Virus record (IMG/VR): IMGVR_UViG_3300024239_000011
Location: 186,001 to 250,000 of that record
Length of the DNA stretch: 64,000 bases
Strand: one strand, 5' to 3'
Position numbers and translations under genes: made by a program. The notes below the pieces were generated by a model. That model had not been told where the DNA came from, did not search any database, and saw only the letters and a list, made by a program, of their open reading frames with translations. Of the stretch, positions 15,996 through 21,193 are shown piece after piece. Position 1 is the first letter of the stretch; each line of letters begins with the position of its first letter.

Positions 15996-17138
15996 ATGAC
16001 CGACAAAATCAGGAAGTTCATTAACGAAAATGACCCCCAGACCCCATGCGTCATCATTGACGTTGATGTGGTCCGGAGGAATTATCACAAACTCAAATAC
16101 TTCCTTCCCGAAGCCGATGTCTTTTATGCGGTGAAGGCAAATCCTGGCAATCCTATTATTGAATCATTGGCAGAAATTGGGTCATCCTTTGACGTTGCCA
16201 GCATTCAAGAGCTTGATCTAGTTCTAAGTTTCGGCGTTAAACCCGAGAAAATTTCGTTTGGTAACACGATCAAAAAAGAACGTGACATAAAGTACGCTTA
16301 TGACAAGGGCATTCGCCTGTTCGTTTGCGACGCAGAATCCGAGCTTGAGAAAATTGCCCGTGCTGCCCCTGGCGCCAAAGTGTTCTGCCGCATTCTGTGG
16401 CTTGGGGAAGGCGCAGAATGGCCGCTATCCCGCAAGTTTGGGTGTGATCCCGATATGGCAGTAGACTTGCTCATTCGTGCCAAGGAACTGGGTCTGGACC
16501 CCTATGGGGTATCCTTCCACCCAGGCTCGCAACAGAAAGACCTCAATCAGTGGGATTTGGCAATCACCAAGGTCGCAGAAATTTTCCGTCAGGTCTATCG
16601 CGAAGCCGAAATTGAACTCAAAATGATCAACATGGGTGGTGGTTTTCCAGCCCCCGGCTATCGCACCCCGGTACAGAGCCTTGAGTCCTATGCCGACATT
16701 ATTCGGGCATCCATGGAAAAGAACTTCGGTGAAGATGAGTGGCCAAGAATCATCGTGGAACCCGGTCGTTCCATGACCGGAGACGCTGGTATCGTCCGAG
16801 CAGAAATCGTCCTGATTTCGAAGAAGATCGAGTCTGAATTTGAACCGCGTTGGGTCTATCTCGACATCGGTAAATTCAGTGGGCTTGTTGAGACGTTCGA
16901 GGAAGCCATCACCTATCGGTTCAAGACCCCGCGTGATGGTGATGAAGCGGGTCCGGTAATTCTAGCAGGACCAACGTGCGACAGCCTCGACATTCTATAT
17001 GAGAAAACGGAATACAATCTTCCGCTGACGTTGGAAATCGGGGATAAGGTTGAAATCTTGTCCTGTGGGGCGTATTCAACCACATACGCCTGCGTCAACT
17101 TCAATGGCTTCCCGCCGCCAAAGATATACTTCATATAA
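15996..17138 (+). CDS. PLP-dependent ornithine/lysine decarboxylase (fold III)
   Basis: FYAVKANP, FDVAS, KFGC, SFH.GSQ, GGGF, EPGR, GPTCDS.D, GAY. Confidence 0.95.
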   Translation: MTDKIRKFINENDPQTPCVIIDVDVVRRNYHKLKYFLPEADVFYAVKANPGNPIIESLAEIGSSFDVASIQELDLVLSFGVKPEKISFGNTIKKERDIKYAYDKGIRLFVCDAESELEKIARAAPGAKVFCRILWLGEGAEWPLSRKFGCDPDMAVDLLIRAKELGLDPYGVSFHPGSQQKDLNQWDLAITKVAEIFRQVYREAEIELKMINMGGGFPAPGYRTPVQSLESYADIIRASMEKNFGEDEWPRIIVEPGRSMTGDAGIVRAEIVLISKKIESEFEPRWVYLDIGKFSGLVETFEEAITYRFKTPRDGDEAGPVILAGPTCDSLDILYEKTEYNLPLTLEIGDKVEILSCGAYSTTYACVNFNGFPPPKIYFI

Positions 17139-17565: not shown

Positions 17566-17982
17566 TCAAGGCACTGACCGCAAAATCCGTTCCCATCCGT
17601 CAGTCGTCGCCTCAGTGGCAATTTCCTCGTCATCCAACGCCTGATAGCCGACCAATAGGGAACACGCCCACTTAGGTGATCTTTTCTTACGACGTGCAAC
17701 TTCACGCGCCACCGCCTCACGATACCCAGACATGGCGGCATACAAACCAGGGATGGGATCGCGTTGAACCACAAAATCCCAGGTCAACCCGACCTTGCTC
17801 CCTTCACAACTGCAAATCCCGCCGCCAACGCGGACGCGGGTGTAACCAACCAACATCACCACTCGATCATCAGGAAGAACCGCAAGAATGCCTTCTTCCG
17901 TGTCTTCCAATTCACCATAATGAACCGGTAAGCCATGAGCATCGAGTGGTGGGTTGATGAGTTCTGCGGTTTCAATATTCAT
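17566..17982 (-). CDS. Hypothetical protein
   Basis: ORF from ATG 17982. Confidence 0.5.
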   Translation of the reverse strand: MNIETAELINPPLDAHGLPVHYGELEDTEEGILAVLPDDRVVMLVGYTRVRVGGGICSCEGSKVGLTWDFVVQRDPIPGLYAAMSGYREAVAREVARRKKRSPKWACSLLVGYQALDDEEIATEATTDGWERILRSVP

Positions 17983-18016: not shown

Positions 18017-19822
18017 TCAATGATGACGCCATACCCACCGCAATTTACCACAATCCCATATTCGATCAAAACCAAGTGTCTGCGCAGCAAGACTTTCAGT
18101 CATTTCAGAAGGATTGATACCAAACTTCTCCAATCTTTCCTTACGCAAGATGGATTTATGATACCTACGTTTATAATCCGTATAGTAAAAACTTGGGTCA
18201 ACATTACCATCCAGCATAAATCCAAGACGCTGGTATAGTTTCCCGGTACTGTGGCGATTATCAGAAAAAGAAACTACCGTAGTCGGGCAACATATTTCCA
18301 CAAATGTTTTGAACATTTTCGAAGCAATACCAGGGTAATGAAATCCGTTGGTTGCATATCTCACTAGTTCGTAGTCATATTCACCACGTGGATTGGTTGA
18401 GAACGCCATAACCGCTACGAGAGCATCATCATCGAAGGCACCAAAAATAGTGCCTACGGCAATACCACTCCCTTGTAAATGATGCTTATCTAAAAACTTA
18501 GCAGCAGACGCCCATTCTATCTTGGATATCTCTAATTGTCTTGCCCCGACACCCCGTGGGGCATGTCCAATTAAATGATGTATGCGGCTACGAACTACGT
18601 CATTATTTAGAACCCACTCATCACCGAATATCGTCAGGAGCGAAATTCCTTTTTCATTACATTGGCGCCATTTATCATAGTGATAAAAAGCGTTAGGGCG
18701 CCCCCGCTCGGACCATTGGCTATGAAAATACAACCCGCACATTTCAATCGCCAATGCCAAGTCAGGTAGATAAAAGTCTAGCTCACCCTTAATAATGGTT
18801 TGAGTATTCTTCTTGTAATTTATTCCAGCGTTATCAAGAATACGCTGCATAGCCGTTTCATATCCAGACCGCCCCGGTCGTTCGATCTCATACCGATCCA
18901 TATAGCGTCCAATGGTTCTGTCATTGACCTCCAACTTGACGGCAAGCTCGGATATCGAATACACCTCACAAAGTTGTTCGAACGCTTCTTTGTTTTGAAG
19001 GATATCGTATGCAACTGTAGACATTTGTCCCTGTACCCAATTCGAACGCCCATACCTGTTCAAATAGGTTTGGATACGCTTTGCTTTTACCACATCAGAT
19101 TTTAGAGGATGATCTACCCCTATAGTCGCAACCAAGATATCACGTATCTGCTGCTGAATGACAGGATTGGAAAAAGGGTTATCATATCCTGTTTGTTCGG
19201 TATACGCGGCACGAGCAATGTGCATGGCACTATCAGAACTATACCGATCTTGGCATGTTTGCTTGATTTTCTCTTTCACTTCATCCAATTGGGTATGCCA
19301 TTCCACCCCATATCGTATCAAATTGTTTAGCTTAGTGTTTTCCTTAACCTCTGCTGCCTGGGTATGCCACTCCACCCCATATTTTGCCAGATTTTGCTTT
19401 CGCAATCGGCATTTCACGTCATCTACCATCATGGCGTTTTCTACCCCATAACGCTCGATACAAGTAGAACGCATTTTATCTACAACAGCAGCTTTTTGTT
19501 GATCACTCTGCAAACTATGAAAATTAGATAGTTTATTGGATTGGTTCTCGCGGTTGCAAGAACATTCAACTTTGCTGCCGCAAAACCGAAACCCTTTATC
19601 AAGTGTATTGAATTTTTTACGGTTACCGTTCTTGCAGAATGGCGTCTCATCATGGAGTACAAGATAAACCATTTCGGGTATTGTCAAATCAATACCCCAT
19701 TTTTTGGTTTCTTGATACAACCATGCAAGCAATATCTTGTTTTGATTTATAGAACGCGCATAACCACGTTTTTGACTTAGATTTTTTACGACATCACGCA
19801 TAGTCGAATCCGAATCTCTCAA
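18017..19822 (-). CDS. Hef-like free-standing homing endonuclease (YGVE repeats, Vsr/PD-(D/E)XK nuclease, GNAT-like C-terminal domain)
   Basis: Repeated (K/R)YGVE..Q..VKE units; ELDFYLP..LAIE..G.YFHS...H..K...C...GI.L.TIF.DEW; FL..HHLQG...YELVRY...SFSD.R...G.LY..LGF; AT-rich; start may be ATG 19801. Confidence 0.75.
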   Translation of the reverse strand: MRDSDSTMRDVVKNLSQKRGYARSINQNKILLAWLYQETKKWGIDLTIPEMVYLVLHDETPFCKNGNRKKFNTLDKGFRFCGSKVECSCNRENQSNKLSNFHSLQSDQQKAAVVDKMRSTCIERYGVENAMMVDDVKCRLRKQNLAKYGVEWHTQAAEVKENTKLNNLIRYGVEWHTQLDEVKEKIKQTCQDRYSSDSAMHIARAAYTEQTGYDNPFSNPVIQQQIRDILVATIGVDHPLKSDVVKAKRIQTYLNRYGRSNWVQGQMSTVAYDILQNKEAFEQLCEVYSISELAVKLEVNDRTIGRYMDRYEIERPGRSGYETAMQRILDNAGINYKKNTQTIIKGELDFYLPDLALAIEMCGLYFHSQWSERGRPNAFYHYDKWRQCNEKGISLLTIFGDEWVLNNDVVRSRIHHLIGHAPRGVGARQLEISKIEWASAAKFLDKHHLQGSGIAVGTIFGAFDDDALVAVMAFSTNPRGEYDYELVRYATNGFHYPGIASKMFKTFVEICCPTTVVSFSDNRHSTGKLYQRLGFMLDGNVDPSFYYTDYKRRYHKSILRKERLEKFGINPSEMTESLAAQTLGFDRIWDCGKLRWVWRHH

Positions 19823-19891
19823 GCATCAATCTACAATCATGCCTCAAAATAATTCGAGCGCCAATTTAATTATTACTTGAAATACAATGGT

Positions 19892-19918
19892 TTGGGTAAC
19901 GCGGCTGATTATCTGGGT
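19892..19918 (+). other. Inverted, synonymously different copy of MCP codons LGNAADYLG
   Basis: TTG GGT AAC GCG GCT GAT TAT CTG GGT versus MCP TTG GGC AAT GCC GCG GAC TAC CTT GGG (minus, ~20033-20059); all 8 differences at third codon positions. Confidence 0.85.
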
Positions 19919-19935
19919 TAGATTTGAATAAACAA

Positions 19936-19970
19936 GAAACGGCGCCCGAAGGCGCCGTTTCCCTTTTGTT
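19936..19970. terminator. Bidirectional terminator downstream of MCP
   Basis: GAAACGGCGCC-CGAA-GGCGCCGTTTC stem (cUUCGg loop on minus), T-rich tails on both strands. Confidence 0.85.
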
Positions 19971-19993
19971 CTCGTACTCCAGTAGGAATAAAA

Positions 19994-21193
19994 TCACAAA
20001 AATTTGAGATTCGATGTGTTGATACCAACCAACCCAAGGTAGTCCGCGGCATTGCCCAATGAAGAGGCAGTGTTCGTAAGTTCAATGTAGCCATAACGGG
20101 TCATGAACGACACCACCGGCTCGAAGGTGCGCGGATCGATGATCACGCCCGAAGAAGTCAGCGGCACGTATGGGCAGTAGTACGCAGCAGCGTCGATCTC
20201 GCCCGGACCCTTATAACCGACCAGCACCGGGGTGTTGTCGGAAGCATACTGGTCCACGTACACGCGCATGGAGTTGTTCAGGGTACCGACGAACTTGGTG
20301 TTGGTCGGAGCCTCGAACACACCTTCGGTGGTACGAGCGAAAGCGGAGGTGGTTGCGGACTGAAGAATGGTCAGCGCAGTCGGGGAAACCACAACCCAGT
20401 TACCAGCACCACGACGGGTACGGGCAGCGATGAGGTTTGCCTGACGGTTGATCAGAACGGCCAGAGCGGCATGTTCGTCACCAACGAAGGTGGCGGTACC
20501 AGAGACGTTGCCCTGGTCGTACATGGCGGTCGGGGTGCCCGGCAGAGCGCGAAGGCTCTGAAGGATTTCCTGATCGATTTCAGCAGTGATTTCCTGAGCC
20601 AGAGCGGCCATGATTTCAGCTTCGATGTCGATGCCCTGCTGAGCCTGTGCGTCCTGCGCGGCTTCGAAGGTCCAGCGAGCGGACAGACGACGGGTCTTAG
20701 CTTCGACGGTTTCCTTCAGGATTTGGATGTTCAGGCGAGGACCGGGAACACCTTCCATCGTGGCAGTCGGAGCAGCCTTCGGGTTATTCGGGTCTTGGTT
20801 ACCCGAGTAGAAACGAGCAATGTCGAACGGGGACAGAGCTTCGGTACCAGCAGTCACGCCGCCGCCAACCGCAGGGATCGTGTCGGCATAACGCACACGC
20901 AGGGTGTGAATCTGAGCGACCGGACCAGTCATTGGCTGCACACCAATGATTTCATTGGCAATGACGGTGGGCATAACGCGCCGAATAACCGGCAGAATAA
21001 CCTTGTTCAAAGTTGCGATGTTGCCAGTAGCGGTAGCACCGACAGTGGCGTTTTCCAAGATCGGGGTCTTGGACATCAGGTCTTTGCGAGTGTTCTCAAG
21101 AACAACTTCCATGACCTTCTTCTTATTACCGGTCAGACCCTCGCAGAGAGCATCGCGGGTCTGCTTCCAGTGTGATTCAAAAAGCTTCGACAT
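19994..21193 (-). CDS. Major capsid protein (T4 gp23-like)
   Basis: ILPVIRRVMP..IA.EIIGVQPMTGP, VEAKTRRLSARWT.EAAQD, EITAEID.EI, YCPYVPL, FMTRYG. Confidence 0.97.
   Translation of the reverse strand: MSKLFESHWKQTRDALCEGLTGNKKKVMEVVLENTRKDLMSKTPILENATVGATATGNIATLNKVILPVIRRVMPTVIANEIIGVQPMTGPVAQIHTLRVRYADTIPAVGGGVTAGTEALSPFDIARFYSGNQDPNNPKAAPTATMEGVPGPRLNIQILKETVEAKTRRLSARWTFEAAQDAQAQQGIDIEAEIMAALAQEITAEIDQEILQSLRALPGTPTAMYDQGNVSGTATFVGDEHAALAVLINRQANLIAARTRRGAGNWVVVSPTALTILQSATTSAFARTTEGVFEAPTNTKFVGTLNNSMRVYVDQYASDNTPVLVGYKGPGEIDAAAYYCPYVPLTSSGVIIDPRTFEPVVSFMTRYGYIELTNTASSLGNAADYLGLVGINTSNLKFL

What the first reader, a model, noticed from the sequence alone, without database searches (positions are those of the whole stretch)
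18017..20110. Endonuclease locus stores an inverted, wobble-different copy of the capsid gene: guide RNA or operator for a non-self MCP allele
Seen: between the MCP terminator and the Hef-like endonuclease, plus-strand 19892-19918 reads TTG GGT AAC GCG GCT GAT TAT CTG GGT (LGNAADYLG). The MCP C-terminus encodes the same peptide about 115 bp away on the other strand as TTG GGC AAT GCC GCG GAC TAC CTT GGG. All 8 differences are third-position and synonymous, which is not expected from chance or simple duplication. The intergenic copy uses codons common in the MCP body (GGT, AAC, GCT, CTG), while the last ~30 resident codons use atypical ones (TCA, CTT, GGG, ACA, TTT). Inference: the resident MCP end was recoded for immunity and the copy represents the target allele of endonuclease-free relatives. 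Model A (novel): it is the spacer of a short RNA, from a promoter-like TGAAATAC at 19878 to the terminator at 19936-19970, that guides the nuclease or silences a competitor's capsid gene. Model B (precedent in T4 I-TevI autorepression): it is a non-cleavable operator mimicking the homing site.
Basis: partly seen in the sequence, partly recalled or inferred. Interest (0 to 1): 0.9.

Follow-up and report, generated by a model that had tools for sequence, protein, structure and literature searches.

The report
Inverted capsid-gene scrap beside homing endonuclease
A jumbo phage carries, between its capsid gene and a selfish homing-endonuclease gene, a real 27-base inverted piece of a different capsid allele, which is most likely a scar of endonuclease-driven recombination and not a guide RNA.

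Summary
Plus strand 19892-19918 and minus strand 20059-20033 both encode LGNAADYLG and differ at 8 third-codon positions. It is the only 9-residue peptide duplicate in the 64-kb window (none in 20 shuffles). The locus is identical in at least five independent assemblies.

- The nuclease is a protein-only DUF7487/Hef-like homing endonuclease.
- No promoter or Rfam family delimits a small RNA.
- The endonuclease lacks the TATAAATA late promoter that this phage and related endonuclease genes use, so there is no promoter for an operator to cover.
- About 75 related capsid loci, at least 16 with Hef-like genes right after the capsid gene, show no such copy. The closest endonuclease relative (38% identity) has none either.
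- The exact copy allele is found nowhere but in this phage.

The resident capsid tail uses atypical codons. Synonymous divergence from the nearest relative peaks there. The copy is somewhat closer to relatives' alleles than the resident is.

Best reading (about 0.55): a non-functional relic of another capsid allele, left 9 nt from the cassette boundary by aberrant repair at an endonuclease target. A homing-site mimic bound by the protein remains possible (about 0.15).

The parts
19994..21193 (-). Major capsid protein gene (Gp23 family, 399 aa)
   Evidence: Pfam PF07068, E = 8e-98. It is 81% identical to the Sinorhizobium phage Phosso MCP. It is translationally coupled to the upstream gene.
20033..20059 (-). 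Resident coding of the conserved LGNAADYLG block
   Evidence: It is an outlier among 104 natural alleles of this block: GCG at codon 5 occurs in 3/104 and GGG at codon 9 in 1/104.
19997..20110 (-). Capsid 3' tail with atypical codons and lower G+C; candidate co-conversion tract or homing-target region
   Evidence: G+C falls from about 0.60 to 0.45. GC3 falls from 0.75-0.85 to 0.55-0.60. Codon typicality is lowest here. Synonymous divergence from L209 is 2.1 times the gene mean at codons 361-380, with 15 of 18 codons differing.
19934..19963 (.). Bidirectional intrinsic terminator hairpin after the capsid gene
   Evidence: Scored on both strands. It is homologous to the hairpin in L209, with a compensatory stem change and a shared TTGTTTAT tail.
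19892..19918 (+). Inverted, synonymously different 27-nt copy of the LGNAADYLG block (possible degenerate extension to about 19929)
   Evidence: It is followed by TAG. It starts 9 nt beyond the point where similarity to L209 ends. Its G+C is 52%, within an AT-rich spacer (about 33% G+C by my count).
19802..19891 (-). AT-rich leader upstream of the endonuclease gene, without a recognisable promoter
   Evidence: No sigma-70-like site. No TATAAATA or relaxed variant, whereas the endonuclease genes of L209 and L223 have one.
18017..19801 (-). Free-standing Hef-like homing endonuclease gene (594 aa from the ATG; the ORF opens at a TTG at 19822)
   Evidence: Pfam DUF7487. PHROG 3339 'homing endonuclease', E = 7e-97. 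A Vsr-like ELDFYLP...AIEMCG...FHS block aligns with relatives. Some homologues carry Pfam Vsr, DUF559 or PF18741 hits. The nearest homologue is 38% identical.
19258..19393 (-). Tandem 69-nt repeat inside the endonuclease gene (two DUF7487 modules, YGVEWHTQ)
17566..17982 (-). Downstream 138-aa gene; end of the low-G+C cassette
   Evidence: It has no counterpart after the capsid gene in Phosso or L209, so the region after the capsid gene is hypervariable.

Best explanation
The 27-mer is a relic: a short non-coding piece of a second capsid-gene allele, left in inverted orientation at the edge of the homing-endonuclease cassette.

Proposed history (inferred):
1. Hef-like endonucleases of this family home into the spot just after the capsid gene.
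2. They probably do so by cutting the highly conserved 3' end of endonuclease-free capsid alleles, in or next to the LGNAADYLG block.
3. Normal repair copies the endonuclease gene and the donor's capsid tail into the cut genome. This would explain why the resident tail looks foreign.
4. In one aberrant repair, the broken end carrying the recipient's (or a third phage's) version of the block was joined in reverse beside the palindromic terminator. Most of it was later lost.

The differences are all synonymous because the two alleles diverged while each was a working capsid gene, not because anything was designed.

Shown: the copy, its position, the endonuclease family and its recurrent site, and the atypical resident tail.
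Inferred: the cleavage site, the repair event and the lack of present function.
For: 1. The endonuclease belongs to a family that has repeatedly colonised exactly this site. At least 16 related capsid loci have a DUF7487 gene right after the capsid gene, in either orientation and only 25-40% identical to each other. PA5oct and E. coli phage ph0011 are among them.
2. The copy starts 9 nt beyond the point where similarity to the nearest relative (L209, capsid 93% identical) ends. That point is just after the shared terminator and its TTGTTTAT tail.
3. The copy is not coding or expressed in any recognisable way. A stop follows at once, there is no ATG/GTG start or ribosome-binding site, no promoter and no RNA family.
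4. It is absent from all other loci, including those of the closest endonuclease relatives.
5. The resident tail is atypical in G+C and codons, and the copy fits the gene body better.
6. Synonymous divergence between the window and L209 peaks at codons 361-380, including TCN/AGY serine switches. The 3' bins are mildly elevated across the clade.
7. Eight wobble differences is the ordinary distance between independent codings. Natural alleles average about 5 differences from one another.
8. A similar tail-to-tail junction is seen in 12 IMG/VR contigs of three sequence variants, where one capsid gene is cut 8 nt after the same block.
Against: - The cleavage site of this endonuclease is unknown, and no endonuclease-free sibling genome was found, so the source allele and the repair event are inferred.
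- The 27-nt core has no amino-acid-changing difference. The 9-11 nt after it, if homologous, carry two changes that both make stop codons. That uneven decay (roughly p = 0.03-0.1 by my estimate) would fit constraint on the core.
- The boundaries coincide with the most conserved block, the size of a protein-binding site.
- The tail-to-tail contigs could be a systematic assembly chimera.
- All copies of the locus are identical, so neutrality cannot be measured.
Confidence: 0.55

Rival explanations
1. Homing-site mimic. The 27-mer keeps the sequence the endonuclease recognises in susceptible capsid alleles and is bound, but not cut, by the protein. It would act as an operator or decoy, as in I-TevI autorepression.
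For: - Precedent: the I-TevI operator shares 15/20 nt with its homing site (PMC2988022).
- The copy lies 74-100 nt upstream of the endonuclease start codon.
- It is closer to the consensus of relatives' alleles than the resident at codons 2, 3, 5 and 9.
- The core is intact while its flanks show no capsid similarity.
- The resident allele is an outlier, as expected of a cleavage-immune allele.
Against: - No promoter overlaps or neighbours the copy. This phage uses TATAAATA late promoters, and the endonuclease genes of L209 and L223 have them, but this one does not.
- No related endonuclease locus has any motif-like site beyond chance.
- A binding site has no need to keep codon phase, so the periodic pattern points to origin rather than function.
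- A fully cleavable site in the phage's own genome would be harmful.
Confidence: 0.15
2. RNA weapon or guide. The copy is transcribed either as a short plus-strand RNA ending at the terminator that guides the nuclease, or as the antisense stretch of the capsid read-through or endonuclease leader RNA that silences a competitor's capsid message.
For: - The terminator works in both directions.
- The minus-strand RNA would pair perfectly with a copy-type allele (-52.5 kcal/mol) and only weakly with the resident message (-21.5), which is weaker than 95% of random synonymous recodings.
Against: - No promoter of either type on the plus strand and no Rfam family.
- The nuclease has no RuvC, TnpB, Cas or Argonaute-type domain and belongs to a protein-only homing family.
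- A plus-strand RNA carries the sense sequence.
- There is one spacer, with no repeat or scaffold.
- No genome with the target allele exists in the collections searched.
- It is not conserved in any related locus.
Confidence: 0.04
3. Structural RNA element. In read-through transcripts, the antisense copy pairs with the capsid motif to form a long imperfect stem around the terminator. This would control processing or read-through into the endonuclease gene.
For: The minimum-energy fold of 19790-20070 (-) pairs the two arms. Its z-score is -4.1 against shuffles.
Against: - The stem has a 1x1 mismatch at every third position.
- Only 1 of the 8 differences is G-U compatible (read from the two sequences).
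- The duplex is weaker than 95% of synonymous alternatives.
- Much of the z-score comes from the terminator itself.
- It is absent in relatives.
Confidence: 0.04
4. Chance resemblance, or an assembly artefact.
For: At the raw nucleotide level, 19/27 is within the range of chance matches in this region.
Against: It is the only 9-residue duplicate in the window, with 0 in 20 shuffles, and it lies within 114 nt of its partner. The locus is identical in five independent assemblies.
Confidence: 0.01

Closest known systems
Free-standing homing endonucleases of T4-like phages (Hef of phage U5, SegG, MobE) with co-conversion of flanking markers
   Same: - The gene is a Hef-like endonuclease inserted between conserved genes, next to an essential and highly conserved target gene.
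- It is present or absent among relatives.
- The adjacent gene end looks imported.
- The region forms a boundary of genetic exchange (PMC2988022; PMC10448857).
   Different: An inverted fragment of the neighbouring gene at the cassette edge is not mentioned in the two papers I consulted (PMC2988022, PMC10448857). Cleavage and homing were not tested here.
I-TevI operator (homing-site-like sequence upstream of the endonuclease gene, autorepression)
   Same: A sequence resembling the presumed target lies upstream of the endonuclease's own gene (for the precedent).
   Different: - The I-TevI operator overlaps a defined late promoter, and none is found here.
- The enzyme family differs (GIY-YIG against a Vsr-like PD-(D/E)XK with DUF7487 repeats).
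- The copy here keeps codon phase, which a binding site does not need.
- It is not conserved in related loci.
Gene relics and short pseudogene fragments left by illegitimate or fold-back repair of double-strand breaks near palindromes
   Same: It is a short inverted fragment next to a hairpin-forming palindrome at a recombination boundary. The fragment comes from a diverged allele, and there are no signals of expression.
   Different: The event itself cannot be reconstructed. The two arms are not equidistant from the palindrome centre: the copy lies 18-61 nt away and the resident block 65-106 nt. A simple fold-back is therefore not enough without a later deletion and an allele replacement.

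Membership tests
Hef-like / DUF7487 free-standing homing endonuclease | DUF7487 repeat region | tested here: met
   PF24308, E = 2e-22. PHROG 3339, E = 7e-97.
Hef-like / DUF7487 free-standing homing endonuclease | Vsr-like PD-(D/E)XK nuclease core | tested here: inconclusive
   The ELDFYLP...AIEMCG...FHS block aligns with relatives. Some homologues carry Pfam Vsr, DUF559 or PF18741 hits. The query itself gave no Pfam hit for this part and no PDB sequence match.
Hef-like / DUF7487 free-standing homing endonuclease | Free-standing gene beside a conserved essential gene, present in some relatives and absent in others | tested here: met
   It lies after the capsid gene here and in at least 16 relatives. 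It is absent in Phosso, Atu_ph07 and many IMG/VR loci.
Hef-like / DUF7487 free-standing homing endonuclease | Site-specific cleavage of the endonuclease-free allele, followed by homing | not testable with these tools
   Needs a cleavage assay or mixed infection.
I-TevI-type autorepression operator | Sequence similarity to the enzyme's homing site | tested here: inconclusive
   The homing site is unknown. The copy matches relatives' capsid alleles at 19-24 of 27 nt.
I-TevI-type autorepression operator | Overlap with the promoter of the endonuclease gene | tested here: not met
   There is no sigma-70-like or TATAAATA-type promoter in 19802-19995. This phage's TATAAATA sites all precede ORFs.
I-TevI-type autorepression operator | Binding without cleavage by the endonuclease | not testable with these tools
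   Needs EMSA and a cleavage assay.
RNA-guided nuclease with guide RNA | Nuclease of an RNA-guided class (RuvC/TnpB/IscB/Cas/Argonaute) | tested here: not met
   Only DUF7487 and homing-endonuclease PHROGs were found.
RNA-guided nuclease with guide RNA | Defined small-RNA gene (promoter, scaffold, terminator), conserved next to the nuclease gene | tested here: not met
   Only the terminator is present. There is no promoter, no Rfam family and no counterpart at other loci.
Antisense RNA against a capsid allele | Existence of a target with extended complementarity | tested here: not met
   The exact allele was found only in this phage's own copy. The nearest natural allele differs at 3 of 27 nt. 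Pairing with the resident is -21.5 kcal/mol, against -52.5 for a perfect match.

The most novel reading that the evidence does not exclude
The 27-mer is a working copy of the endonuclease's homing site, kept inside the mobile cassette. The protein would bind it for self-regulation or self-protection. Alternatively, as the antisense stretch of the read-through RNA, it would be used against capsid messages of endonuclease-free competitors. Either would be the first such element for the Hef-like family.
Probability: 0.18. Interest if true: 0.65.

Novelty: new member of a known kind. Interest (0 to 1): 0.35.

Why it matters
If the relic reading is right, the 27-mer is a dated footprint of a homing event. 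It points to the LGNAADYLG-coding block of Gp23-type capsid genes as the probable target of a large, uncharacterised endonuclease family (DUF7487/Hef-like) that sits after the capsid gene in many jumbo phages. That makes the family's specificity directly testable with a handful of synthetic alleles. It also helps explain why the capsid 3' end marks a boundary of genetic exchange. If the site is instead bound by the protein, it would extend I-TevI-style autoregulation to an unrelated endonuclease family.

Tried and rejected
- Extension of the copy to 41-44 nt, suggested by blastn hits to L022 and L048. Rejected in part: the ATAAACAA stretch is the terminator's T-tract, which L209 shares although it has no copy. 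Only TAGATTTGA remains as a weak possible extension.
- Source allele. Searches used a degenerate pattern in IMG/VR, 79 capsid loci, 5.8 billion proteins and the exact 24-mer in JGI metagenome contigs. No exact or near-exact source was found, and no endonuclease-free sibling genome.
- Mosaic analysis of the capsid gene against relatives. All relatives except L209 are only 65-77% identical in DNA, too distant to map a conversion tract.
- Orthologous endonuclease loci. The nearest homologue is 38% identical, so conservation of the copy could only be tested on distant paralogues.
- More inverted motif pairs in IMG/VR at gaps of 0-120 nt. These returned only this phage and one family of tail-to-tail capsid contigs.
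- Allele-likeness test. The copy cannot be told apart from a random synonymous recoding (P = 0.29), because the pool is dominated by low-G+C phages.
- Sandegren et al. 2005 on Hef is not held in the library.
Full report
**What is there.** The window comes from a 543-kb IMG/VR jumbo-phage contig. On the minus strand lie, in order:
- a Gp23-family major capsid gene (19994-21193; PF07068);
- a strong bidirectional terminator (19934-19963);
- a 132-nt AT-rich spacer (19802-19933);
- a 594-aa gene (18017-19801).

The 594-aa gene matches DUF7487 and the PHROG 'homing endonuclease' family 3339 (E = 7e-97). In GenBank phages its relatives are annotated as Hef-like homing endonucleases. The nearest cultured relatives of the capsid gene are Sinorhizobium phage Phosso (81% aa), Agrobacterium phage Atu_ph07 and the PA5oct/Rak2-like jumbo phages.

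**The observation.** Plus strand 19892-19918 and minus strand 20059-20033 both encode LGNAADYLG. They differ at eight positions, all third-codon positions.
- As a plain inverted repeat, 19/27 is no better than other 27-mers of the gene achieve in the same flank.
- The in-frame peptide identity is the only 9-residue six-frame duplicate in the 64-kb window, with none in 20 shuffles. It lies 114 nt from its partner.
- The locus is base-identical in contigs from five separate assemblies, so it is not a chimera.
- Eight synonymous differences is the ordinary distance between two independent codings of this peptide: 37% of random recodings reach it.

What needs explaining is therefore a second, independently coded copy of the motif, not the wobble pattern itself.

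**What the copy is not.**
- It is followed at once by TAG. In-frame it has no ATG or GTG start, and an in-frame TTG at 19877 has no ribosome-binding site.
- No sigma-70-like promoter occurs on either strand of 19700-20100.
- This phage uses T4-type late promoters. All five TATAAATA sites in the window lie 13-93 nt upstream of long ORFs in the right orientation. The endonuclease genes of two relatives have such sites. The 194 nt upstream of this endonuclease gene have none, even in relaxed form.
- No Rfam family reaches its threshold.
- The nuclease has no domain of any RNA-guided class.
- In a read-through minus-strand RNA, the antisense copy can pair with the resident motif. That duplex has a mismatch at every third base and only one G-U-compatible difference. 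At -21.5 kcal/mol it is weaker than 95% of synonymous alternatives.

**Comparison with relatives.** LGNAADYLG is one of the most conserved blocks of these capsid proteins, with more than 120 IMG/VR hits to the degenerate pattern and 104 distinct natural codings.

DUF7487 endonuclease genes sit directly after the capsid gene in many relatives:
- PA5oct-like phages and E. coli phage ph0011;
- 13 of 78 related IMG/VR capsid loci, in either orientation;
- L209, whose capsid is 93% identical to the window's;
- L223, which carries the closest endonuclease homologue at 38% identity;
- L224, which has two in tandem.

These endonucleases are only 25-40% identical to one another. The site is therefore a recurrent landing place for the family.

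None of these loci contains a second copy of the motif. This holds for a translated search, for a nucleotide search against a within-gene null, and for inspection of the spacers. The exact 24-mer of the copy occurs in the JGI metagenome contigs only in this phage. The nearest natural allele differs at 3 of 27 positions. 'Relatives match the resident better than the copy' is not met: the copy is 3-8 differences from relatives and the resident is 4-11.

- The last ~35 codons of the resident capsid gene have lower G+C and GC3.
- They also have the lowest codon typicality in the gene, with codons absent from the body such as GGG and ACA.
- The copy fits body usage better (-9.5 against -15.3 log-likelihood).
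- Against L209, synonymous divergence peaks at codons 361-380. Fifteen of 18 same-residue codons differ, with 21 nt changes including TCN/AGY serine switches. The gene-wide rate is 39%.
- Across unsaturated pairs in the clade, the two 3' bins are mildly elevated, at 1.1-1.65 times the mean.
- The resident coding of the motif is farther from the natural pool than 99% of natural alleles.

All this fits a capsid 3' end that is repeatedly replaced or selected at silent sites, as expected for a homing target and its co-conversion tract (general mechanism: PMC2988022; phage-wide pattern: PMC10448857).

**Position of the copy.** The terminator is homologous between the window and L209. It has the same loop, a compensatory G:C to A:T change in the stem, and a shared TTGTTTAT tail. 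Similarity ends there. The copy begins 9 nt further on. It therefore sits at the very edge of the cassette-specific DNA. At 52% G+C it is an island in an AT-rich spacer (about 33% G+C by my count), which suggests origin from a capsid gene of a G+C-richer genome such as this one.

The apparent 41-44 nt extension seen by blastn is mostly this terminator tail. Only TAGATTTGA, compared with TTG-(A/G)TT-GGA in relatives, may be a degenerate continuation. If so, it carries two changes that both make stop codons.

**Best explanation (confidence about 0.55).** The copy is a relic of another capsid allele. It was left in reverse orientation by aberrant repair of an endonuclease-induced break at or next to the conserved block, beside a palindromic terminator that favours strand switching. 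The resident tail was brought in with the endonuclease cassette. The synonymous-only pattern reflects divergence of two working capsid genes before the event.

A possibly parallel structure exists in 12 IMG/VR contigs of three sequence variants from four samples. There, two capsid genes lie tail to tail, their arms are 76% identical, and one gene is cut 8 nt after the same block. I could not exclude a systematic chimera for those contigs.

**Rivals.**
- A homing-site mimic bound by the protein has the I-TevI precedent (15/20 nt). The intact 27-nt core with unrelated flanks argues mildly for it. The absence of a promoter and of any counterpart in related loci argue against it (about 0.15).
- Guide or antisense RNA: about 0.04.
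- An RNA stem in read-through transcripts: about 0.04.
- Chance: about 0.01.
- The remainder is unassigned.

**Verdict.** This is a real and statistically non-random feature at an ordinary kind of locus, a free-standing homing endonuclease beside a capsid gene. It is most likely a recombination scar. The high-novelty readings are not supported, but a protein-binding role is not excluded. Its main value is that it nominates the LGNAADYLG block as the homing target of an uncharacterised endonuclease family. Interest 0.35.

Noticed in passing
L005:1880-4185, L066:1880-4185 and L213-L222: Twelve IMG/VR contigs (four samples, three sequence variants about 96% identical to each other) carry two Gp23-type capsid genes tail to tail. 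The arms are only 76% identical in DNA. One gene is truncated 8 nt after the LGNAADYLG block and abuts the stop codon of the other. This is either a real inverted duplication of the head module or a systematic chimera.
   Followed up: partly
window 1087, 28150, 30049, 47109, 51764: All five TATAAATA sites lie 13-93 nt upstream of long ORFs in the right orientation, so this jumbo phage appears to use T4-type late promoters. The endonuclease genes of L209 and L223 have such sites. The one in the window has none.
   Followed up: partly
L128-L196, L209:5326-7044, L223:291-2072, L224:1317-4800, L002:4301-5878, L003:4319-5917: DUF7487/Hef-like endonuclease genes, 25-40% identical to each other, recur directly after the capsid gene in many jumbo phages, in either orientation. 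L224 has two in tandem. The genes further downstream are unrelated between relatives, so this is a hypervariable boundary.
   Followed up: partly
window 19934-19963 and L209:5245-5275: The terminator after the capsid gene is conserved between the window and L209. It has an identical loop and a compensatory G:C to A:T change in the stem.
   Followed up: no
window 19258-19393: A tandem 69-nt repeat (70% identity) inside the endonuclease gene encodes two DUF7487 modules with the same YGVEWHTQ octapeptide. The protein carries about seven such modules.
   Followed up: no
window 15996-17138 (+): A 380-aa gene with Orn/DAP/Arg decarboxylase Pfam domains lies two genes beyond the endonuclease. It is a possible auxiliary metabolic gene of the phage.
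   Followed up: no
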